Part shown: piece after piece, positions 1 to 9,664 of the stretch
Numbering within the stretch: the first letter of the stretch is position 1
How the letters are laid out: each line of letters begins with the position of its first letter
Assembly: GCF_006345805.1 (NCBI RefSeq)
Contig: NW_021827874.1
Location: 1-9,664, forward strand
DNA length: 9,664 bases
Reading direction: 5' to 3'
Source: Octopus sinensis
Lineage: Eukaryota
Position numbers and translations under genes: made by a program
Notes under the pieces: model-generated
What the model saw: only the letters and a program-made list of their open reading frames with translations
What the model was told of the DNA's origin: nothing
Databases searched by the model: none

Positions 1-142
1 TGCTTATTGTTGTGAATAAACCGGCCGACAAACTTGCCACAGAAGCAGCAGTTGTGATGGATCTTCTCTGGATTGGTGCTCGAAATATTTTGGTAGAAAT
101 GAGGATGTATTTAAGGTAGTTTAGGCGGAGATATTTATACAT
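1..142 (-). CDS. CLPB: First exon of a second CLPB copy (rest of gene beyond the left window edge)
   Basis: ATG at 142..140. Bases 1..286 are identical to 7190..7475, which contain exon 1 of the complete copy. Exon is 22..142 under the GT-donor model. Whether the rest of this copy is intact cannot be seen. Confidence 0.8.
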   Translation of the reverse strand, partial: MYKYLRLNYLKYILISTKIFRAPIQRRSITTAASVASLSAGLFTTIS

Positions 143-417
143 TCAAAAGTGCAACAGAAATGTGAGAATAAATATTTTATTTGAAATAAATTATTTACAT
201 TTATAACTATTTTCAATGCAATAAAACTAGACATTTAGAAATGATGAATTATAAAAATTTTATTTTAAAAAATAGTATGAAAAGAAGACTGTCTCTAAAA
301 ATCTGTATAAGAATATTGAAATATACATTGTTGGGTGGGAGATATTGTGAAAGTAAGATTTTGTCTTTTAGACACCTCCACTCTTCTTGAGATTGCGATT
401 TTTTGGAGGCTGTCTAG

Positions 418-735
418 ATTATTATTATTAAGCACACCGCAAAATAACGTTAATAAAGTTATCTCGCTTGTGCCACCCTTCCTGGATGCGTTTTGTTATC
501 GCTTCAAAGTCCCTCTGTTCCTCGATAGTTTCCTCAGGTGCTTAAGATCGTCTGCTGAATTCAACTCTTTTCAAATCAAAGTTAGGTCTTGATACAGAAG
601 GGTTGCTAGAGTTCCTGGTCTTCCTCGGAAGGTCGTTTCCGGATGAAAAGTGTAGTGGTGTTCCATTGCGAGATTTGCGGGAGTTTTTCTGTCCATTATA
701 GGATGTGACCGAATAAGCCCCATCTACATGGGAGA
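418..735 (-). mobile_element. Old 3' remnant of an RTE-clade non-LTR retrotransposon with (TAA)n tail
   Basis: Minus-strand reading RWGLFGHIL..MDRKTPANLAMEHHY...FRGRPGTLATLLYQDL...SADDLKHLRKLSRNR fits the RTE C-terminal GHILR / RGRP / DL..LR.LA.DR signature. It has an internal stop and frameshifts, a stop at 459..461 and a tail of (ATT)4 at 418..429 on the plus strand. The 5' limit is approximate. Confidence 0.75.
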
Positions 736-2200
736 TGACTAAACATACTTCATTCCCAATTAAAAAATCGTATTTCGATTGATGAACATTCATTTTATTA
801 TTCATCCGTTTAAAATACGATAAATTTAAATTTGGTGGTGAAAAATTCATTAAAAAATCATTATGATCCAAGTTTTCTAGCATGCTTTATACAAATTTAT
901 CTGAAACGGATAAATATTGTATCATTACTTGTAATTGAGGACGATTTGGTCTTCCATAAATGTGTTTGATTTTGTTTTTAGGGCAAAAAGAATCAAGATA
1001 ATTATTCTTAAATTCCGTTTCATTATCTTTTTGTAGAATCTGTAGATCGTCTGTTTTTTCTTTATTAGGTAATAAAAAGTAAAAATAATTTTATTGCAAA
1101 AAATAATTATTAAACGCATGAATGAAATTAAATTTTCGTCAATATTTTTTGTCTTTCAAATAGCATTCACAGTTAATATGCAGAGTGGATTGTGCTTGGT
1201 CAAATAGTCTTAAAATTCACGAATTTTTAATTCAATTTGTGAAGTACAATGAATTGTAATAAAAACACTTTGTGAAGAATTTATTTTATATAAAAGTTTA
1301 TAATTTACCTTCAAATATTCAAAAAGAAATTTTGAATGTTAAACTTTTACGGCCAAAAAATTCATTTGAATCTGCATCATTAATTAAATTTTATGTAAAA
1401 TGATATCAAATATCAAAACATTGGATTATATAAATATATTTTTTGTTTTTGTTTTCAAAAACATGTTTCAAAAACAACAAGGATTTGCATCATGCTAAAT
1501 TTAAAATCAGTTGATCGTAAGAAACCAAATATTAACGATGATATTTTAATATTCAGATTTAGAAAAATTAGTTCTGATAAACAACACCATCCATTAATTG
1601 AATAATTTTTCCCTTATTTTTTTAAATTGATAAGAGGTACGGAAAATATTGTTTAGATACCAAGAAATAAACGTGGCAAAAATGTTTGAAAACTACTGGT
1701 TTAATACATAATGAAAGAAGAGATATACTGTTAAAATTATTGACTTAAACTTTGAATTTTTAAAGTTTTAATTTTGATTTTCTAATTTTTTTAAAATGCT
1801 AAAATCAAAAAAAAATAAAAAATTTCTCAAATAAATCAAAGAATTAGTTTTGAACTTACAAAAAATAAAGTCCATGTTAAATTGAAAGAGATTATTAAGA
1901 AAATGCTTTACAATATTGCGTATTCTGCTTATATGAAAATCTCATTCAGAAACGTGACAAATAAATTGTATTTTAAGAGTTCACGTGGACAACATGTGAA
2001 AATGTGAAAATGTTTAATTTTATTTAAAATAACGAGTCGTTTTTATTGCAGAACATTTACAGTTGTTATTAAATACTTGTCAGAATCATTTGTTGAATAA
2101 TAATTTCACGACTGAAATTTTGGAGGTTTATATTGAAAAAATAATTCAGTAATATATTTATTTTAAGACATTTTTGGATATTTTTTTAGAAATGTTAAGG

Positions 2201-4909
2201 TCAATAAGAAGAAGAACTGATGGCGATCCTGTTTCCCCTCACTATTGCTTGGGACACGTTCTGGAGGAGCCATCTTGTCTCCAGAGGATTGTGTGTTCTC
2301 AAGGTCTTGAAACGTCCAATACACTTGAGGAAGCACAACGACTCCTTCCCAATCGATTCCAGGGTTTCGACAGCAACCGCCGGAAAACGTAACGATCGGT
2401 GAGCCCATCATATTTCTTCTTCTTGATGTCCTTTGCTTTATCTGCAGCTGTGCCGGCATTGCAGGCACTTTCCAACATGTTTGTCTTGGACAAGGAGCCG
2501 GAACATGTTGAATCCCATACGAGAGGCTTTCCTTCCAAAAACGGAAAGATAGTCATCCCGTCTGGGCGTTTTCCATCTCCTCGGTCCAATCCAGGTGGTT
2601 CCAGCACTGATGGGAATCCGATTGAATCTAGAGCTCTTCTTATAACGTCGTTGAGAGCTGAATGACTCGGGAATCTACCAGCGCTTTTACGACAGGAAAG
2701 ATGGTGAAGTCCAAATTGATCAATCGATACACCACAGCGGAATTTGTGTGGTTCACAAACTTTGAGACCGATACGTAGACATATACCAACTCGCAGTGTG
2801 TCAGAATCCAAGAAAGTCCCCAAGCTTCCGATCGGGAAGGCTTCCAACCATTCTCCACTCCCCGTGGACCTCCCGGCAAGCAAGCATGCTCTACGATGTT
2901 GATTCGATTCTTTAGGAGACTTTCGAAGCGACCTTCGCACACAATCTTGTCATAACTCTTCTGCAAAGAGAAGTCCGACGGCAGCTTCGATTCGTTTGCG
3001 CTCAACTGTCAAAGTAGGCAGTCATCTTAGGTATTGAAGATTCGGGGAGGAGATGGAGAATCTTCCGAACCAGAGTTTGACTGCTGAACAGTGAAGACAG
3101 GAATGCGGGGCGGATCACATCGATAGGATTTCGGATGCCAAGACCTCCAAAGGAGACAGGAAGGGAAGCTTGTTTCCAGCCTTGATCGTCGAATTTGATG
3201 TTTATGATGCGTTCGGTTGTTTTCCGGAAAAGGACATTAATAGAATGAAGTTGATCATTTTCTAAGAAGCAGGGTGACCCCCGTAGCACATGATTTAATT
3301 TTTGGATGCCAAGGGCATTTTTGAGCAGGAAGAAGGCTCTTTTCCAGTAGCATTTCCTTAGTTTCAAGAGCGTCCTTGATTCCAACATCTGTCAATGGGC
3401 AGCCTAATATCTCCAGACTGATACTAGGCGTGATGGACGCTCCGGGAATTATCTCACTGAAAAAGGAAACAATAACCTCGAATTCATCACGACGGAACCT
3501 AAAATTAATGATTTCACTTTTTGAAGTGTTCAGTATAAGACCAACGCATTCAAGTCTCGGAATTAGGTCAACGAACGTCTTGAAAACAGTTTCGGGATGA
3601 CCTCCGAGGGTGCAGTAATCAAGGTACCAAACATTCAGCGGGGTTGAGCAGCTCTTAACAATGTGATCAATTCCAAGGCAAAAGAGAACAGGACCCAAAG
3701 GGTCTCTTTGTTGAACCCCCGAGGACGAGGAAATATGGTAAGGGCCATGGACGAGGGTGGATGGTTTCGCGTATGAGCTAAGAACATAGTTGTATATTTC
3801 GGGACAAAATTCAAGACTGTTCTGCAATATAGAGTCGCGGCGAATAGTGTTAAATGCATTACGGATGTCCAATTTAACAATAATATGGGGAGTATTGTTG
3901 TTTATGTGGTTGAATTCACGGATTCCGTGTATTGCAGCTTCACAACCTCCTGGGGTACCAACTCCAAGTTGAATAGGGAACATTAGCAGGCTTAATGTTG
4001 GGATAACAGCCCTGCATGCCATCTTTGAAGCTAGCCGACGGAAGACAGATCCAACTGCAATGGGTCGAACAACCCCTCCTTTCTTTTCTAGCGTGATCAG
4101 TTTTGCAGAGAAGAAAAAGTGACGGACTAGCTCTGGAAGATCTCCCAAAAGCATTCTGTTGATAAGAGAACAGATCGACGAAAGAAGCCGAGATCCCGAG
4201 TTTCCAGTGTCCGGCGAGATCAAGTCCTTAAGATGTCCTGGTCGCAGCCTGTCTAGATTTGCCCCGCTGCTTGGAGCGAAGGATAAAATTCCGGCTTTAA
4301 TGTCATCGTCCGAGACAGACAATGGCTGAAGAATCCCTGGGAGAGGTGGATTTCGTGAGTCGCTTGGAGCGGCCGGATGTCGATCCAGGAGAGCTTCATG
4401 AGTCTCAATTGAAGGCTTCAGGAATGGACTATCACTGGAGAGCACTCTCAAAGCCGAGCGTATTCCCCCTTCCAATAATTTAGAATGAATGGTCCTCCGT
4501 AAGTGTATCTCTTCAGAAAGTGTATCCTTTGGTATCTTTCGATGACTCTTCACAGTAGCCGGTTGTAATGGGGGATCAATCACCGTAAGTCCGGAATCAA
4601 ACAGGCGTATGTTTTCTTTGACGGACGATGACAAAGATCTACCACGAATTGTAGAACCAGAAGGTAAGCCCAAAACACAAGGGACAAAACAAAGCAGGCG
4701 GACCCAGTAACTGATGTCGTTCGAATGCTGGCTGAAAGGCAGTCGGCAACAGTTAAACGAGCTCCTCTGGGGATCCTTCTTGAGGATGACCATTTATAAA
4801 TCGTGTCAAGTAGGCGTTCGTGATCCAACGGTACAGTGCAGGCAGTTTGATTGAAGGAGCAGTGCCAGCTGGAAGGCATAGGTGACAGGGTAATCTCCAA
4901 TTTTAGGCA
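2201..4909 (-). pseudogene. Frameshifted RT-zinc knuckle-RLE polyprotein of the CRE-like element
   Basis: ORF-track pieces 4580..4900, 3255..4793, 3002..3388, 2640..3005, 2299..2940 plus a final frame to 2201. Consecutive pieces are in different frames (five shifts, near 4710, 3337, 3005, 2890, 2375). Catalytic YLDD reads TAC CTT GAT TAC (YLDY, 3615..3626). QGDP reads QRDP, and the first knuckle Cys reads Phe. Confidence 0.9.
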
Positions 4910-5037
4910 TACTATAAATTTCGACGTATAAGCAATAGATTTTAATTATTTTTTCATTTTTTATTAATTTAAGTTAATTTTAATGGATTTGTCTATTGAA
5001 TTGTCTGGATTTTCATATTTTTTAAGAATAAAAATTA

Positions 5038-5200
5038 AGCCAATGGGAAATGTTAGTAAGGGCCTTCTTAGAAACTCCTCGCATGACATGTGAAGGAGCC
5101 TTGAGCACGCTGAACAAGTGATCGTTCTCTTTCTCGTGTTAATTATGTTGCATTTTTCGCACGGATGGCTGTTTTTCTTATTTACCTCATTAATCTTCAT
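5038..5200 (-). pseudogene. Broken PHD-finger-like coding segment
   Basis: ATG at 5200, then C-x2-C-x11-C-x2-C-x4-H-x2-C (CEKCNIINTRKRTITCSACSRLLHMSC). A one-base shift continues GVSKKALTNISHWL, the expected run-up to the final W-x-C-x2-C, and the sequence is then cut by AT-rich DNA. Confidence 0.6.
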
Positions 5201-5263
5201 TGCACTGACTCTGTATTGAAAATAGTGAATGCACCACACCACGTTAAAATTATAATTTCAAAA

Positions 5264-5312
5264 AAATAACCACAGGAATAACCACAAAAATATAAATAAA
5301 TAACCACAGGAA
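5264..5312. repeat. Three copies of AATAACCACA (TGTGGTTATT on the minus strand) downstream of the CLPB stop
   Basis: Copies at 5265..5274, 5277..5286 and 5299..5308. Copies 1 and 3 extend to AAATAACCACAGGAA. Confidence 0.85.
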
Positions 5313-5359
5313 ATCAAAAATATTTTAAAATCATAAATTTAGTCAAATGGAGCAAACTC

Positions 5360-7331
5360 CTACCAATATCCATGAGATGAATCTGGTGAAAACTCGAGTT
5401 TAATTCTTCCACAAACATTTTCCGAACTATTTCCATCAATTTTGAGAGTAATGGTGGATCCCTCTTTAATTAACTCCTGTTCATGTGCAAAGGCAATCTG
5501 ACTAATAATCCTCCTCTCAATCTCATGTTTGATTGACCTTGCTCCATAGTGAATGTCGTACCCATCAATGAGCACCTCCACCACAGAACTGTCCCACTCG
5601 AGTGTCATCTTATTCGACTCCATCGCCTTTTTGGCCCAAAACTCGAGTTCCTTGACAACCAACCTTCTCAACTCGTATTTAGAAAACGGCAAAAAGTAGA
5701 CAAATTCGTTTATTCTCCCCAAAAACTCATCCCTTTTGAAATGCCTCTGCAAATCACCGCAAGTAAAAACCTTAAGAATAGGCCGGACTTGGCTGTCCTT
5801 GAATTCCCTCGAAACAGTAACCAACTCAAACACTTCTGAGAATATCAAAAAGCCCTAAACCACTAGATCCAGCCCCCTGTCTTTGCTCGGCCTCCTCTCT
5901 CAACTGCCCCCCATACTCAGCAATTTCCTCACTGGCGAGATTGGAGGTCATGACAAATATAGCGTCCTTGCACTCGATTGTGTTGCCCTTTCCGTCAGTC
6001 AGTCTCCCCTACATTCCCCAATACACTCACCTCGTCGAATAATTGGAGCATTATAGTCAGAACATCGGGATGAGCCTTTTCTATCTCATCAAAGAGGACG
6101 ACGGAATCAGGACACTCCTTTAGTAGATTCGTCAACTGTCCTCCCTCCTCGTGACCCACGTACCCGGGAGGAGACCCTATGAACTTGGCCACTTCGTGTC
6201 GATGCTGGAATTCAGACATGTCCATTCGAATAAAGGCTTTCTTGTCTCCGTGAAGATATTTTGCCATCTGTTTGGCCAATTCTGTCTTGCCGATCCCCGA
6301 AGAGCCGAGAAAAAGAAAAACAAGTGGATGGTCTCGGTCTACCCAACCATTTTGTTTCCGTCTTATAGCTACCATATCAACGGAAAGAAAAACCCGAGGA
6401 TACCGCGGAAATGGCACTCTCCTGCCCCACAATCGACTCTCTCAGCACATCCTCTATCAGGTGCTCACGTCGCTCTTCCGCAGACTTGGAATTTCGTTTT
6501 TTAAGGACCTATCATTTGGGTTCCGCTTTTAACCTCTTTTGAGTGGTTTTCCAACAATTTCTTAACTTTTTCACTTCTGGCGTAGTCCGCCGGTTTGTGG
6601 CCGCTTTCGTTCTCTTCCAAAGGGTCCGCTCCTGTCATGACTGAGGGATGAGACCTGCTTCAAGCAGAGCTTCCACAACCGGGATGCTGTTCGATGCTAC
6701 TGCGTAATGAAGGGCCGTACAGCCACGGAAATTCCCATACGGAGACACTCTTCCACTGAAGCAATCATCTCTGTCCATTTGGACTATTTTAATTTATTAT
6801 TTATTTAAATAAAATATTAAATTAAATTATATGCTGCTTGTGGAGCATTAAATATAGCGTGGATTACCCTGAAGAGACACAAGTCCGAAAAATGAGGATG
6901 ATTCAATGACACTCGAGAACTCGTCCTTAAGGTTGGGATCAGCACCGGCAGCCAGCAACAGTTTTGCCATTCTGTCTCAAATCATACTTGGAGTACTCAG
7001 TTTGACCGTTGATGGCTGCAGTCATGAGCGGAGTCCACCCAAGAGGGTGTCGCCGATTGACATCCACGGTCCCCGAGTTGATAATACTCTGAAATTCGCT
7101 GATTCTTCCGTAGCGAATGGTTTGGAATATGTAGTCCTTGTCTAACAGTCTTTATTAGGGTATTTTGCCATTTGGGAAAGTTGAGAATGTGCTTATTGTT
7201 GTGAATAAACCGGCCGACAAACTTGCCACAGAAGCAGCAGTTGTGATGGATCTTCTCTGGATTGGTGCTCGAAATATTTTGGTAGAAATGAGGATGTATT
7301 TAAGGTAGTTTAGGCGGAGATATTTATACAT
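5360..7331 (-). CDS. CLPB: Mitochondrial disaggregase CLPB/Skd3 (ankyrin repeats + one AAA+ NBD), 10 exons, about 549 aa (563 aa if intron 1 is the 27-nt GC-AG variant)
   Basis: Hand-spliced exons, 5' to 3': 7331-7211, 7141-6997, 6971-6868, 6783-6655, 6631-6534, 6508-6394, 6368-6031, 6008-5861, 5835-5771, 5746-5360 (total 1650 nt, frame preserved at every junction). N-terminus [31 protein letters not shown] is basic and acid-free (mitochondrial presequence-like). Ankyrin motifs: [32 protein letters not shown] and [11 protein letters not shown]...[25 protein letters not shown]+ motifs: Walker A GSSGIGKT, pore loop GYVG, Walker B VVLFDE, sensor-1 [11 protein letters not shown], sensor-2 YGARS. 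The ANK + single NBD layout matches animal CLPB as I recall it. Confidence 0.96.
5747..5770 (-). other. CLPB intron 9, 24 nt (in-frame, stop-free)
   Basis: GTTTTTACTTGCGGTGATTTGCAG. Removal gives [20 protein letters not shown], matching the recalled CLPB motif [20 protein letters not shown] without an 8-aa insertion. Confidence 0.85.
5836..5860 (-). other. CLPB intron 8, 25 nt
   Basis: GTTTAGGGCTTTTTGATATTCTCAG. Removal joins [15 protein letters not shown] in frame. Confidence 0.85.
6009..6030 (-). other. CLPB intron 7, 22 nt
   Basis: GTGAGTGTATTGGGGAATGTAG. Removal restores the invariant Clp motif [14 protein letters not shown]. Confidence 0.96.
6369..6393 (-). other. CLPB intron 6, 25 nt
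   Basis: GTTTTTCTTTCCGTTGATATGGTAG. Removal gives [22 protein letters not shown]. Confidence 0.92.
6509..6533 (-). other. CLPB intron 5, 25 nt
   Basis: GTTAAAAGCGGAACCCAAATGATAG. Removal joins ENHSKE to [14 protein letters not shown] in frame. Confidence 0.85.
6632..6654 (-). other. CLPB intron 4, 23 nt
   Basis: GTCTCATCCCTCAGTCATGACAG. Removal restores LLEAGADPL. Confidence 0.92.
6784..6867 (-). other. CLPB intron 3, 84 nt
   Basis: GTAATCC...TTAAAATAG. It has an in-frame stop, and removal joins VSLQ-V-QMDRDD in frame. Confidence 0.9.
6972..6996 (-). other. CLPB intron 2, 25 nt
   Basis: GTACTCCAAGTATGATTTGAGACAG. Removal gives [19 protein letters not shown], a gapless ankyrin repeat. Confidence 0.9.
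7142..7210 (-). other. CLPB intron 1 (69-nt GT-AG, or 27-nt GC-AG at 7142..7168)
   Basis: Acceptor GACTGTTAG|AC at 7142 is fixed by the downstream frame. Both donors (G|GTTTAT at 7210, G|GCAAAA at 7168) are phase 1. In-frame TAA TAA at 7152..7157 makes splicing obligatory. Confidence 0.65.
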
Positions 7332-7476
7332 TCAAAAGTGCAACAGAAATGTGAGAATAAATATTTTATTTGAAATAAATTATTTACATTTATAACTATT
7401 TTCAATGCAATAAAACTAGACATTTAGAAATGATGAATTATAAAAATTTTATTTTAAAAAATAGTATGAAAAGAAA

Positions 7477-7768
7477 TAAGCACACTGCAAAATAACGTTA
7501 GTAAAGTTATCTCGCTTGTGCCACCCTCTCCTGGATGCGTTTTGTTAATTGCTTCAAAGTCCCTTTGTTCCTCGATAGTTCCCTCAGGTGCTTAAGATCG
7601 TCTGCTGATTTCAACCCTTTTCCAATCAAAGTTAGGTCTTGATACAGAAGGGTTGCTAGAGTAATTCGTGCTCTTCCGAATGAGGAGCGTAGTGATGTTC
7701 CATTGCGAGATTTGCAGTTTTCCTGTGTATTCTTAGGATGTGACCGAATAAGTCCCATTTAGATCGTC
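7477..7768 (-). mobile_element. Duplicated copy of the RTE remnant (tail and 5' flank deleted)
   Basis: Aligns with 429..723. Reads KWDLFGHILRIHRKTANLAMEHHY, then shifts into ITLATLLYQDLTLIGKGLKSADDLKHLRELSRNKG (end of ORF 7507..7758). Confidence 0.75.
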
Positions 7769-7923
7769 TGTATTTTCTTTATTAGGTATTAAAAAATAAA
7801 AAAATATAAATAATTTTATTGCAAACAAAATTATTAAACACATGAGTGAAATTAAATTTTTGTCAATATTCCTTGTTTTTTTAAATAGCATTCACAGTTA
7901 ATATGCAGAGAGATTGTGCTTAG

Positions 7924-7929
<6 letters not shown>

Positions 7930-7967
<38 letters not shown>

Positions 7968-8106
7968 TGTAATTAACAAATAGTTATTAACTAACTAAAT
8001 TCCCGGCATCGTAAATGGAAACACAGTTTCCACGTACTATGGCCAAGGAAATCCTTTCGAAAAGCCACTTGGACTCGCGTGGGTCTCCCCGTTTATGGGA
8101 AAGCCA
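7930..8106 (-). mobile_element. Young 5'-truncated CRE-like retrotransposon copy (177 nt) with poly(A) tail and 11-bp TSD
   Basis: TSD CTTAGTCAAAT at 7919..7929 and 8107..8117. T36 at 7929..7964 is poly(A) on the minus strand. Open frame 8106..7987 reads WLSHKRGDPRESKWLFERISLAIVRGNCVSIYDAGNLVS*, the conserved CRE RLE C-terminus. A single empty site CTTGGTCAAAT lies at 1195..1205 in the other copy. Confidence 0.92.
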
Positions 8107-9491
8107 CTTAGTCAAATAGTCTTTAAAATTCACAAATTTTTAATTCAATTTGTGAAGAATTTATTTTATATAAAAGTTTATAATTTACCTCAAATATTCA
8201 AAAAGAATTTTTTGAATGTTAAACTTTTACGAGTCAAAAAATTCATTTGAATCTGCATCATTAATTAAATTTTATGTAAAATGATATCAAATATCAAAAC
8301 ATTGGATTATATAAATATATTTTTTGTTTTTGTTTTCAAAAACATATTTTTGCAAACAAGGATTTTCATCATGCTAAATTTAAAATCAGTTGATCGTAAG
8401 AAACTAAATATCAACGATGATATTTGGATGTATCTATAATTTTAATATTCAGATTTAGAAAAATTAGTTCTGATAAACAACACCATCCATTAATTGAATA
8501 ATTTTTCCCTTATTTTTTTAAATTGATAAGAGGTACGGAAAATATTGTTTAGATACCAAGAAATAAACGTGGCAAAAATGTTTGAAAACTACTGGTTTAA
8601 TACATAATGAAAGAAGAGATATACTGTTAAAATTATTGACTTAAACTTTAAATTTTTAAAGTTTTAATTTTGATTTTCTAATTTTTTAGAATGCTAAAAT
8701 CAAAAAAATAAAAATTTCTCAAATAAATCAAAGAATTAGTTTTGAGCTCACAAAAAAATAAAGTCCATGTTATTATAGATTGAGAGAGATTATTAAGAAA
8801 ATGCTTTGCAATATTGCGTATTCTGCTTATATGAAAATCTCATTCAGAAACGTGACAAATAAATTGTACTTTAAGAGTTCACGTGGACAACATGTGAAAA
8901 AGCTTAATTTGATCTAAAATAACGAGTCGTTTTTATTGCAGAACATTTATAAGTTGTTATTAAATACTTGTCAGAATCATATGTTGAATAATAATTTCAC
9001 GACTGAAATTTTGGAGGTTTATATTGAAAAAATAAAAATAATTCAGTAATATTTTTATTTTAAGCCATTTTTTGGATATTTTTTTAGAAAGATATTTATG
9101 CATTGTATTAAAAATTGAATACATTGCTTGATTTTAAAATATCTCGAACAAAAAATTTTGCAATTTTATTTGTATTTACAAAAATATTTGAATATAAATC
9201 GTTATAATAAAAAAAGAAATGTCCATGATTAAATTAAATTCAGACCTTTTTAACTTTTCGATCCGAAAGATAGTGTTCGGGTACCAGGAAATGAATAAAT
9301 TACTTCATTAAAATAAGTCACGATGAAAAGAAATGATTGTGCTTAATTAAATATTCGGATATTGTCCTTTGAAGAAGTGGATAAGGTGAAATCAAATAAT
9401 AGAAATTGTTTTATTTAATAAAATGAAAATTCGGCATACAACCAAAGTATAAAAGAAACTAATAATCATTAAGTAATGTTTAGGGCAATTT

Positions 9492-9588
9492 TTTTCAGGC
9501 ACTTAAAATTTATTTTTAGGACCTTAAAAATAGGCATTTTAGGACTTTATTTTTAATTTTTAGGACTTTATTCTACATTTTTAGGCAC
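9492..9588. repeat. Cluster of six degenerate TTTTAGG(A/C)(C/A) motifs
   Basis: TTTTCAGGCAC 9492, TTTTTAGGACC 9513, AAAATAGGCAT 9527, TTTTAGGACTTTAT 9537, TTTTTAGGACTTTAT 9557, TTTTTAGGCAC 9578. Confidence 0.6.
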
Positions 9589-9664
9589 ATTTTAATAAGG
9601 TATTAAATCAAAAAGTCGTAAAAAATTATTTGTTATAGTAAGGTATTAAATAATTTTTGACATT

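What the first reader, a model, noticed from the sequence alone, without database searches (positions are those of the whole stretch)
2180..5360. CRE-like retrotransposon sits exactly at the junction of a CLPB tandem duplication
Seen: homology between the two copies ends at 2192/9090. The element's ORF stop (2201) is only 8 nt inside that breakpoint, with no poly(A) of its own, since the adjacent A7 is shared with the other copy. Its other end lies about 120 nt from the CLPB stop, and the sequence following 9090 does not resume there. The geometry is repeat - element - repeat. Inference, three models: (a) insertion-associated duplication, in effect a roughly 3.9-kb target-site duplication carrying a whole gene; (b) unequal crossover between two CRE copies on different haplotypes; (c) the element belongs to the duplicated unit and was clipped in its 3' UTR. 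A haplotype mis-join through the repeat in assembly gives the same picture.
Basis: partly seen in the sequence, partly recalled or inferred. Interest (0 to 1): 0.72.

Follow-up and report, generated by a model that had tools for sequence, protein, structure and literature searches.

The report
Dead LINE bridging a CLPB repeat
A dead retrotransposon lies exactly between two copies of the front end of a parasite's CLPB gene, which could be a gene duplication made by the retrotransposon, but the window is a whole 9.7-kb orphan contig that stops inside the second copy, so an assembly mis-join cannot be excluded.

Summary
Window 1-2192 repeats at 7190-9090. A roughly 3-kb non-LTR retrotransposon on the minus strand fills 2193 to about 5242. 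Its stop codon (2203-2201) lies 8 nt from the repeat boundary. An intact 10-exon CLPB gene (7331-5360) sits just upstream of it in the same orientation.

Three new facts change the reading:
- The window is the complete contig VCDQ01008815.1 of the Octopus sinensis assembly. No left flank exists there, and the "second CLPB" is only exon 1 plus 21 nt of intron 1.
- Seven of nine CLPB introns are 22-25 nt. The DNA is therefore almost certainly from a dicyemid kidney parasite, present as a contaminant.
- The element is a dead PHD-RT-restriction-like-endonuclease LINE. "CRE-like" was not verified. The only other copy found ends in the same CTA7-8/TCCRAAAA motif that also marks the empty site at 9069-9087, so the 3' junction looks like a genuine insertion junction.

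My leading model is one aberrant integration with a 3.85-kb "long target-site duplication" (0.33). Two element copies joined by the assembler (0.27) or by unequal crossover (0.20) are nearly as likely. Interest is modest, and the case is a new example of a known kind.

The parts
1..2192 (.). Repeat copy A. This is the CLPB upstream region plus exon 1 of a second gene copy. It is cut off by the contig end at position 1.
   Evidence: It aligns to 7190-9090. Substitutions are 0/286 in 1-286, 8.6% in 429-723 and 2.4-6% in 1266-2192. There are 12 indels longer than 5 nt. Segments 288-428 and 724-1042 are present only in A.
22..142 (-). Second copy of CLPB exon 1, with ATG at 142-140 and a GT donor at 21-20. 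This is all that exists of "CLPB-left".
   Evidence: It is identical to exon 1 at 7211-7331, at an offset of 7189.
2171..2189 (-). Motif CTAAAAAAATATCCAAAAA, immediately 3' of the element (the occupied site).
   Evidence: The pattern CTAAAAAAA N0-2 TCCRAAAA occurs only here, at 9069-9087 and at the 3' end of the L001 copy. None is expected in shuffled sequence. The pattern was defined after seeing the data.
2193..5242 (-). Non-LTR retrotransposon of PHD - RT - restriction-like endonuclease type. It is essentially full length but dead. Its 5' end is uncertain and lies within 5202-5359.
   Evidence: ORF pieces are listed and Pfam RVT_1 and PHD matches. It is 95.1% identical to L001 9505-11985. 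Disruptions:
- a 153-nt insert with in-frame stops;
- a frameshift near 4720;
- a 35-nt deletion at 3340;
- 1-nt deletions near 3003, 2908 and 2379;
- a further frame change near 2340.
2201..2203 (-). Natural stop codon (TGA) of the element ORF.
   Evidence: The C-terminus ...AIVRGNRIAISSSSY* aligns with the C-termini of relatives.
2452..2901 (-). Restriction-like endonuclease region, with a CCHC motif, GKRPDG, WD.TC and K..KY.
   Evidence: Alignment with three relatives. The window copy has Cys-to-Phe in the CCHC motif and Arg-to-Ser in the PRH motif.
3504..4088 (-). Reverse transcriptase domain.
   Evidence: Pfam RVT_1, E = 2.7e-11. The nearest solved structures are R2 retrotransposon proteins, E about 1e-5, using the L001 copy as query.
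4889..5041 (+). 153-nt AT-rich repeat inserted into the element's PHD region. It carries in-frame stops.
   Evidence: It is 94-96% identical to L001 8132-8281 and 9163-9269. The ORF pieces on either side are in the same frame.
5072..5161 (-). N-terminal PHD-type zinc finger of the element. The likely ATG is at 5201.
   Evidence: Pfam PHD, E = 7.6e-4, below the curated cut-off. The same N-terminal PHD is present in the second family in L001 and in P0134.
5243..5359 (-). Spacer between the CLPB stop and the element's open frame. It contains TGTGGTTATT three times. It must hold the CLPB 3' UTR, the element's 5' UTR, or both.
   Evidence: It has no similarity to 9091-9664.
5360..7331 (-). Intact CLPB (SKD3-type mitochondrial disaggregase) gene: 10 exons, 549 aa. 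Introns are 69, 25, 84, 23, 25, 25, 22, 25 and 24 nt.
   Evidence: Gene model. Pfam finds ankyrin repeats, AAA_2 and ClpB_D2-small. It is 60% identical to metazoan CLPB proteins. NCBI's partial model is XP_029654221.1.
7190..9090 (.). Repeat copy A': intron 1 (part), exon 1 and 1.76 kb upstream of the intact CLPB.
7929..8107 (-). Young, 5'-truncated insertion of a second PHD-RT LINE family (its 3' end plus a poly(A) tail, seen as T36 on the + strand). It is flanked by a 9-10-nt target-site duplication, TTAGTCAAA(T), at 7920-7929 and 8108-8117. It is absent from copy A.
   Evidence: It matches L001 17511-17671 at 161/161 nt, which is the tail of the 1007-aa ORF element there. The sequence is shown and the T-run.
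9069..9087 (-). The same motif, CTAAAAAAATATCCAAAAA, at the unoccupied site.
9091..9664 (.). Unique AT-rich flank running to the other contig end. It contains repeats with a 21-nt period at 9487-9585.

Best explanation
The contig comes from a dicyemid parasite, not from the octopus it is filed under.

Read in the sense of CLPB, the order is: unique flank - CLPB upstream region (A') - intact CLPB - at most 158 nt of spacer - a full-length but now dead PHD-RT-RLE LINE - a second, diverged copy of the upstream region with exon 1 (A) - contig end.

My leading model is a single, aberrantly resolved retrotransposition:
1. The element's endonuclease nicked the bottom strand at its preferred A-rich motif, 1.76 kb upstream of the CLPB ATG.
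2. That 3'-OH (...TTTTTTTAGAAA) annealed to the RNA tail (...UUUCUAAAAAAA) and primed reverse transcription.
3. The far end of the cDNA was joined to a top-strand break just behind the CLPB stop, 3.85 kb downstream, probably on the sister chromatid or by break-induced replication, rather than a few bases away.
4. This duplicated the whole promoter-plus-gene unit as a 3.85-kb "target-site duplication" with the element at the joint.
5. Both the element and the non-coding parts of the repeat then decayed by about 5%. The gene end of the repeat was kept identical by gene conversion.

What is shown: the anatomy, the polarity, the junction overlap and the decay. What is inferred: that it was one event, that a complete left gene copy exists, and the gene conversion.
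For: - Polarity: the layout is exactly that of a target-site duplication. The element's 3' end is joined to the start of the downstream repeat copy, and its 5' side to the end of the upstream copy.
- 3' junction: it looks like a true target-primed junction. Twelve nt (TTTCTAAAAAAA) can be assigned either to the element or to the target. The motif CTAAAAAAA N0-2 TCCRAAAA follows both available copies of the element and is intact at the empty paralogous site. None is expected by chance.
- Economy: only one element copy is needed. Nothing resembling an element follows A'.
- Timing: the element differs by 4.9% from its nearest copy. The repeat arms differ by about 5% in substitutions (61 of 1189 aligned positions outside the identical block). 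Both fit one event of the same age.
- Gene conversion: a block with 0 differences in 286 nt meets sequence that is 8.6% diverged, and the switch falls at an indel. This is the usual signature of gene conversion between tandem paralogues.
- Precedent: L1 experiments and tumours give 1-10 kb tandem duplications with the insert at the joint, described as "large TSDs" (bioRxiv 10.1101/2024.12.14.628481). PCAWG reports an L1-bridged tandem duplication (PMC7058536).
Against: - The window is a 9,664-nt orphan contig of contaminant DNA. It ends 142 nt into the supposed second gene, so a complete left copy is unproven.
- No second dicyemid-type CLPB protein is annotated anywhere else in that assembly. 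The protein cluster has one member on one contig. That is what a single-copy gene predicts. A real duplication fits only if two identical gene bodies were collapsed by the assembler.
- The one ordinary insertion of a related family on this contig made a 9-10-nt duplication, not a kilobase-scale one.
- The motif evidence rests on two copies and was defined after seeing them. An unbiased local-alignment test of the two flanks is not significant (55 of 200 shuffles reach the observed score).
- LINEs of this type are dense in this genome: three RT-bearing elements lie in the 22 kb of L001, and repeats make up 49% of the D. japonicum genome (PMC6736024). Two copies flanking one gene would therefore not be unusual.
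Confidence: 0.33

Rival explanations
1. Assembly mis-join through two real element copies. The gene is single-copy. One element copy lies behind CLPB. On a diverged haplotype or strain in the pooled parasite population, a second copy is inserted at the 9090 site. The long-read assembler merged the two 3-kb copies and strung haplotype A and haplotype A' in tandem.
For: - The window is a whole 9.66-kb orphan contig of contaminant DNA. It ends 286 nt into the block that is 100% identical to the other copy, which is where a collapsed repeat would end a contig.
- Only one CLPB of this type is annotated in the assembly.
- Dicyemid samples are pools of many individuals. The published D. japonicum assembly needed haplotype merging (PMC6736024).
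- Element copies differ by only about 5%, which is below raw long-read error as far as I recall.
- A TE insertion difference between A and A' is already visible at 7929-8107.
Against: - The divergence between A and A' (about 5% substitutions and 12 indels longer than 5 nt in 1.9 kb) is about four times the 1.24% heterozygosity reported for D. japonicum.
- Zero differences in 286 nt next to 8.6% divergence is awkward for alleles.
- The model needs two same-family, same-orientation copies 3.85 kb apart, one of them polymorphic.
- The CLPB reading frame is clean over 1,650 nt, so the consensus quality is good.
Confidence: 0.27
2. A real unequal crossover between two element copies on different haplotypes. 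One haplotype carried an element at the 9090 site. The other carried only the copy behind CLPB. Recombination between them gave a true tandem duplication whose arms were already diverged alleles.
For: - The geometry is the same as in the mis-join model. It explains why A' is followed directly by the unique flank and why A and A' were diverged from the start.
- LINE density is high (PMC6736024).
Against: - It needs the same two-copy, polymorphic arrangement as the mis-join, plus a crossover.
- There is no sign of a hybrid within the element: identity to the L001 copy is flat along its length, 3-6% per block. That test is weak.
- It requires the same unusually deep haplotype divergence.
Confidence: 0.2
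3. Tandem duplication of a unit that already contained the element. One breakpoint fell by chance or by microhomology in the element's short 3' UTR. The other fell at the A-run at 9090.
For: - The window copy has only 8 nt between its stop codon and the boundary. The L001 copy has a 21-nt 3' UTR followed by A8 (29 nt in all), so the window copy could be clipped.
- CTAAAAAAA at both breakpoints could serve as microhomology.
Against: - A random breakpoint within about 30 nt of an element end has a prior probability of only about 1%.
- The motif beyond the A-run (TCCRAAAA) is also shared with the flank of the L001 copy. That fits a target preference better than a random break.
Confidence: 0.08
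4. The element inserted later into the joint of an older duplication, or the unit is a retrocopy made by 5' transduction of a CLPB-element read-through transcript.
For: The element lies in the same orientation as CLPB and at most 158 nt behind it, so read-through transcripts are plausible.
Against: - Hitting a pre-existing joint to the base is very improbable.
- A retrocopy would not keep all nine introns and 1.76 kb of upstream DNA.
- It would also have had to land exactly beside its own source.
Confidence: 0.03

Closest known systems
L1-associated tandem duplications or "large TSDs" in human cells and tumours (PMC7058536; bioRxiv 10.1101/2024.12.14.628481)
   Same: A LINE insert sits exactly at the joint of a direct tandem duplication. 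Its 3' end lies at an endonuclease-type target. The size falls in the reported 1-10 kb class.
   Different: Those events are somatic or experimental, involve an APE-type L1 and are validated by read pairs and copy number. Here the element is RLE-type, the event would be germline and old, it would involve a whole gene, and it is unvalidated.
Restriction-like-endonuclease non-LTR retrotransposons (R2, R4, NeSL/Utopia, CRE and HERO clades; PMC4640811)
   Same: There is a single ORF with RT followed by a CCHC motif and a PD-(D/E)xK endonuclease. There is an N-terminal zinc finger. The nearest solved structures are R2 proteins. There is a hint of sequence-specific targeting.
   Different: The N-terminal finger is PHD-type. 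No rRNA, snRNA, spliced-leader or microsatellite target was seen. Clade membership was not established, because no reference sequences were available here.
Segmental duplication by non-allelic homologous recombination between dispersed repeats
   Same: It gives a repeat - element - repeat layout with a hybrid element at the joint.
   Different: Classical NAHR leaves an element copy at the outer ends too. None follows A'. It therefore works here only if one parental haplotype lacked that copy.
False (heterotype) duplications in long-read assemblies of heterozygous or pooled samples
   Same: Two diverged versions of one locus are placed in tandem on a short contig that ends in the shared part.
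   Different: A plain bubble mis-resolution would not place a transposon's exact 3' end at the joint. It needs a second real element copy.

Membership tests
RLE-type non-LTR retrotransposon (LINE) | Reverse transcriptase domain of the non-LTR type | tested here: met
   Pfam RVT_1, E = 2.7e-11, on window 3255-4793. R2 proteins are the best PDB matches for the L001 copy.
RLE-type non-LTR retrotransposon (LINE) | CCHC motif and PD-(D/E)xK restriction-like endonuclease C-terminal to the RT | tested here: met
   C..H..CRCG...H.LSC, GKRPDG, WD.TC and K..KY align across four sequences. The window copy carries Cys-to-Phe in the CCHC motif, so it is a degenerate member.
RLE-type non-LTR retrotransposon (LINE) | No terminal repeats of its own; A-rich 3' end | tested here: met
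   There are no direct or inverted repeats at the element's ends. The window copy ends in A7 and the L001 copy in A8. The sister family has a long poly(A) tail.
CRE clade (CRE1/2, SLACS, CZAR and Repbase CRE group) | RT groups with CRE reference sequences in a phylogeny | not tested
   No CRE, NeSL, HERO or R4 reference sequences were available in the tools. Database relatives carry no clade names.
CRE clade (CRE1/2, SLACS, CZAR and Repbase CRE group) | Site-specific insertion into spliced-leader RNA genes | tested here: not met
   The Rfam scan of the whole window found no spliced-leader or other RNA gene and there are no tRNAs. The flanks are AT-rich intergenic DNA. A different recurring motif was seen.
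Ordinary target-primed insertion | Short target-site duplication or small deletion, with the flanks contiguous in the empty site | tested here: not met
   The empty site is preserved at 9079-9100. The sequence beyond it (9091...) is not found at the element's 5' side. The only flanking direct repeat is the kilobase-scale A/A' pair.
Tandem gene duplication of CLPB | Two complete gene copies in tandem | tested here: inconclusive
   One complete gene is present. The second is represented by exon 1 only, because the contig ends. No second dicyemid-type CLPB protein is annotated in the assembly.
Metazoan CLPB / SKD3 mitochondrial disaggregase | Ankyrin repeats, one AAA+ (AAA_2) module and a ClpB D2-small domain | tested here: met
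   Pfam on the spliced 549-aa product. It is 60% identical over more than 90% of its length to metazoan CLPB proteins.
Dicyemid (Dicyema) genome | Spliceosomal introns mostly shorter than 30 nt in an animal gene, and association with an octopus host | tested here: met
   Seven of nine introns are 22-25 nt. Among animals such introns are reported only in myxobolid myxozoans and Dicyema japonicum (PMC13644364). D. japonicum was collected from Octopus sinensis (PMC6736024). The contig is filed under O. sinensis.
Dicyemid (Dicyema) genome | Direct match to a dicyemid reference genome | not testable with these tools
   No dicyemid sequences were found in the searchable collections. There were no near-identical hits other than the two O. 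sinensis records.

The most novel reading that the evidence does not exclude
A germline, evolutionarily retained duplication of a complete nuclear gene (promoter, ten exons and 3' end of the mitochondrial disaggregase CLPB), made in one step by a restriction-like-endonuclease LINE as a 3.85-kb target-site duplication in a dicyemid. Gene conversion then kept the two gene copies identical.
Probability: 0.3. Interest if true: 0.55.

Novelty: new member of a known kind. Interest (0 to 1): 0.3.

Why it matters
If the single-event model is right, it would be a natural, inherited example of DNA-level gene duplication made directly by LINE integration. That outcome has so far been documented mainly in human tumour cells and L1 over-expression clones. 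It would also extend the mechanism from APE-type L1 to the older RLE-type LINEs.

There is also a practical consequence. At least two contigs of the Octopus sinensis reference assembly appear to be dicyemid parasite DNA: VCDQ01008815.1 (9.7 kb) and VCDQ01005081.1 (668 kb). Their RefSeq proteins, XP_029654221.1 and XP_029654080.1, are therefore attributed to the wrong animal. This matters for cephalopod gene catalogues and for any claim of host-parasite gene or transposon sharing.

Tried and rejected
- Exact-sequence look-up of the 512-aa RT frame found nothing.
- The search with the full spliced CLPB protein did not return the window's own protein, because NCBI's model is a 243-aa fragment outside the length filter. 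The last-exon search found it.
- The Rfam and tRNA scans gave no RNA-gene target, no HDV-like ribozyme and no SINE origin.
- A search for a short target-site duplication around the 5'-truncated L001 copy found no shared word of 8 nt or more.
- An unbiased local alignment of the two 3' flanks was not significant: 55 of 200 shuffles reach the observed score. The motif result is therefore only suggestive.
- The spacer 5202-5359 compared with the flank 9091-9664 showed no similarity.
- The two small frames in the GC-rich part of the repeat (542-883 and 7507-7758) have no Pfam match and are not conserved in frame between A and A', so I do not regard them as genes.
- Most small indels between A and A' are not homopolymer-length differences (6 of 13 are). 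The divergence is therefore real and not read error.
- Neither the O. sinensis genome paper nor any report of dicyemid contamination in octopus assemblies is in the searchable library.
- The identity profile of the element against the L001 copy shows no step that would reveal a hybrid of two copies. That test is weak.
- I did not build a mended or consensus element. The breaks are only listed.


Full report
**What the window is.**
A search with the last CLPB exon returned one near-identical protein. It is XP_029654221.1, "caseinolytic peptidase B protein homolog [Octopus sinensis]", located on a contig of exactly 9,664 nt. Fetching that contig showed that VCDQ01008815.1 of assembly GCA_006345805.1 is the exact reverse complement of the window from end to end. 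The window is therefore a whole orphan contig.

**Whose DNA it is.**
On the minus strand, 7331-5360 holds an intact 10-exon gene encoding a 549-aa protein. The protein has ankyrin repeats, an AAA_2 module and a ClpB D2-small domain. It is about 60% identical to CLPB/SKD3 proteins across animals, and no closer to molluscs than to echinoderms. Its nine introns measure 69, 25, 84, 23, 25, 25, 22, 25 and 24 nt, all with GT..AG ends, and removing them restores conserved motifs. Among animals, introns shorter than 30 nt are reported only in myxobolid myxozoans and in the dicyemid Dicyema japonicum (PMC13644364). D. japonicum lives in the kidneys of Octopus sinensis, and its genome is 36.7% GC and 49% repeats (PMC6736024). 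The contig is therefore almost certainly parasite DNA assembled together with the host.

**The repeat.**
Window 1-2192 matches 7190-9090, and homology stops at 2192/9090. The arms are unevenly diverged:
- 1-286 has 0 differences. This block covers 21 nt of intron 1, all of exon 1 with the ATG, and 144 nt upstream.
- 429-723 has 8.6% substitutions.
- 1266-2192 has 2.4-6% substitutions.
- There are 12 indels longer than 5 nt. Segments 288-428 and 724-1042 are present only in A, and a 178-nt insertion is present only in A'.

Only 6 of the 13 small indels are homopolymer-length changes. The CLPB frame is clean over 1,650 nt. The differences are therefore real and not read noise. The "second CLPB" consists of exon 1 (22-142) and nothing more.

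**The element.**
On the minus strand, from about 5242 to 2193, the order is:
- a PHD-type finger (5072-5161, likely ATG at 5201);
- a reverse transcriptase (RVT_1, 3504-4088);
- a C-terminal CCHC plus GKRPDG / WD.TC / K..KY restriction-like endonuclease (2452-2901);
- a natural stop at 2203-2201.

Its closest relative is XP_029654080.1, also labelled O. sinensis, on the 668-kb contig VCDQ01005081.1 (locus L001). The DNA is 95.1% identical over window 2193-4651. The nearest solved structures are R2 proteins.

The window copy is dead. It carries:
- a 153-nt AT-rich repeat with in-frame stops inserted in the PHD region (4889-5041);
- a frameshift near 4720;
- a 35-nt deletion at 3340;
- 1-nt deletions near 3003, 2908 and 2379;
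- a further frame change near 2340;
- substitutions at conserved endonuclease residues.

"CRE-like" is not established. No reference sequences were available for a phylogeny, and the defining spliced-leader target is absent. I file the element as an RLE-type LINE of undetermined clade (clades as listed in PMC4640811).

**The junctions.**
In the element's sense the 3' end reads ...TGA CCTTAACA | TTTCTAAAAAAATATCCAAAAA.... The empty site reads ...TAAATATC | TTTCTAAAAAAATATCCAAAAAA.... The L001 copy ends ...TAA, then a 21-nt UTR, then CTAAAAAAAATCCGAAAAG. The pattern CTAAAAAAA N0-2 TCCRAAAA occurs only at these three places in 31.5 kb, and shuffled sequence gives none. I defined the pattern after seeing the two copies, and an unbiased flank alignment is not significant. 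I therefore treat it as a suggestive target preference with n = 2. If it is real, the 3' junction is a genuine target-primed junction with up to 12 nt of primer-template overlap. That argues against a random duplication breakpoint (model c).

The 5' end cannot be fixed. It lies between the CLPB stop (5360) and the ATG (5201). This spacer shows no similarity to the sequence beyond 9090. The insertion was therefore not resolved in the ordinary way, or else the contig does not represent one molecule.

**Polarity.**
In sense orientation the contig reads: flank - [A' - CLPB - spacer] - element - [A - CLPB exon 1...]. This is the arrangement of a target-site duplication. The element's 3' end is fused to the start of the second copy, and its 5' end to the end of the first. 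It corresponds to a bottom-strand nick at the motif and a top-strand break 3.85 kb downstream. Tandem duplications of 1-10 kb with an L1 insert at the joint have been seen in L1-expressing clones and tumours. Their authors call them "large TSDs" (bioRxiv 10.1101/2024.12.14.628481). PCAWG describes a single L1 event bridging sister chromatids to give a tandem duplication (PMC7058536).

**Why it is not settled.**
The same picture arises if two copies of the element exist, one behind CLPB and one inserted at the 9090 site on a diverged haplotype. These could then have been merged by unequal crossover in the animal or by the assembler.

Points in favour of merging:
- The contig is a short orphan that ends inside the identical block.
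- Only one dicyemid-type CLPB is annotated in the assembly.
- Dicyemid samples are pooled populations.
- Such LINEs are dense. L001 carries three RT-bearing elements in 22 kb, and a young insertion difference between A and A' is already visible.

Points in favour of a real duplication:
- The arms differ about four times more than the reported heterozygosity.
- The sharp switch from 0% to 8.6% at an indel looks like a gene-conversion boundary.
- The age of the element (4.9% from its nearest copy) matches the roughly 5% divergence of the arms.

A related family made an ordinary 9-10-nt duplication on this very contig. Kilobase-scale duplications are therefore at best the exception.

My estimates are:

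| Model | Probability |
|---|---|
| Single-event long TSD | 0.33 |
| Assembler mis-join | 0.27 |
| Real unequal crossover | 0.20 |
| Unit including the element, with a clipped 3' UTR | 0.08 |
| Other | the remainder |

**Verdict.**
The explanation remains open between a known but rarely documented LINE-made duplication and a repeat-mediated join. Spanning long reads and copy number, or the D. japonicum assembly, would settle it. The firmest new result is incidental: this contig and a 668-kb contig of the octopus reference share three repeat families at 94-100% identity and appear to be dicyemid DNA.

Noticed in passing
window 1-9664 (whole): The window is the complete contig VCDQ01008815.1 of the Octopus sinensis assembly GCA_006345805.1, in reverse complement. 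NCBI annotates a 243-aa fragment of its CLPB as an octopus protein (XP_029654221.1). The gene structure indicates a dicyemid parasite, so this is contamination in a reference assembly and in RefSeq and UniProt.
   Followed up: yes
window 5360-7331 (-): Seven of the nine CLPB introns are 22-25 nt (the others are 69 and 84 nt), all with GT..AG ends. These are among the shortest spliceosomal introns known in animals, and they explain why the automatic gene model is truncated.
   Followed up: yes
L001 (VCDQ01005081.1, range 318310-340187): The 668-kb "octopus" contig shares three repeat families with the window: the element at 95%, a second LINE tail at 161/161 nt, and a 153-nt AT-rich repeat at 94-96%. 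No other octopus protein matches the element's RT. The contig is therefore probably dicyemid too. The alternative is horizontal transfer of transposons between host and parasite, which I consider unlikely but did not exclude.
   Followed up: partly
window 7929-8107: A young, 5'-truncated insertion of a second PHD-RT LINE family lies in copy A' only. It has a T36 run on the + strand and a 9-10-nt target-site duplication, TTAGTCAAA(T). It is identical to the tail of the 1007-aa ORF element at L001 14485-17671, so that family was active very recently.
   Followed up: yes
window 4889-5041; L001 8132-8281 and 9163-9269: A 153-nt AT-rich repeat is inserted in frame (51 codons, with stops) into the element's PHD region. 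In L001 two copies lie in inverted orientation about 900 nt apart, next to the truncated element copy. It may be a MITE-like family. No terminal repeats or target duplication were worked out.
   Followed up: partly
window 2171-2189 and 9069-9087 (-); L001 12008-12025 (+): The motif CTAAAAAAA N0-2 TCCRAAAA follows both known copies of the element and marks the empty site. It may be a target preference of this LINE family. It rests on two copies and was defined after seeing them.
   Followed up: partly
L001 11753 (and protein XP_029654080.1): The L001 copy lacks 16 nt that the window copy and more distant relatives retain (the K..KY region). The annotated 625-aa protein therefore runs out of frame at its C-terminus. 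That copy is also 5'-truncated at about 9505.
   Followed up: yes
window 429-723 and 7477-7758: This is a GC-richer segment (about 45%) inside the repeat, and it is the most diverged part (8.6%). It carries open frames of 113 and 83 aa that are not conserved in frame and have no Pfam match. Its nature is unknown. It could be an old transposon fragment or a diverged exon.
   Followed up: partly
window 288-428 and 724-1042: Two segments of 141 and 319 nt are present only in copy A. The second is bounded by similar short sequences (TCTACA / TCTGTAGA), which suggests a microhomology deletion in A'.
   Followed up: no
window 9487-9585: Two arrays with a 21-nt period (units resembling TTTTAGGACTTTATTCTAAAT) lie near the right contig end. 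They may be the reason the contig stops there.
   Followed up: no
window 5262-5292: A 12-nt unit (AAAAATAACCAC on the + strand, TGTGGTTATT in sense) occurs three times in the spacer between the CLPB stop and the element's start codon. It is not found in L001.
   Followed up: partly
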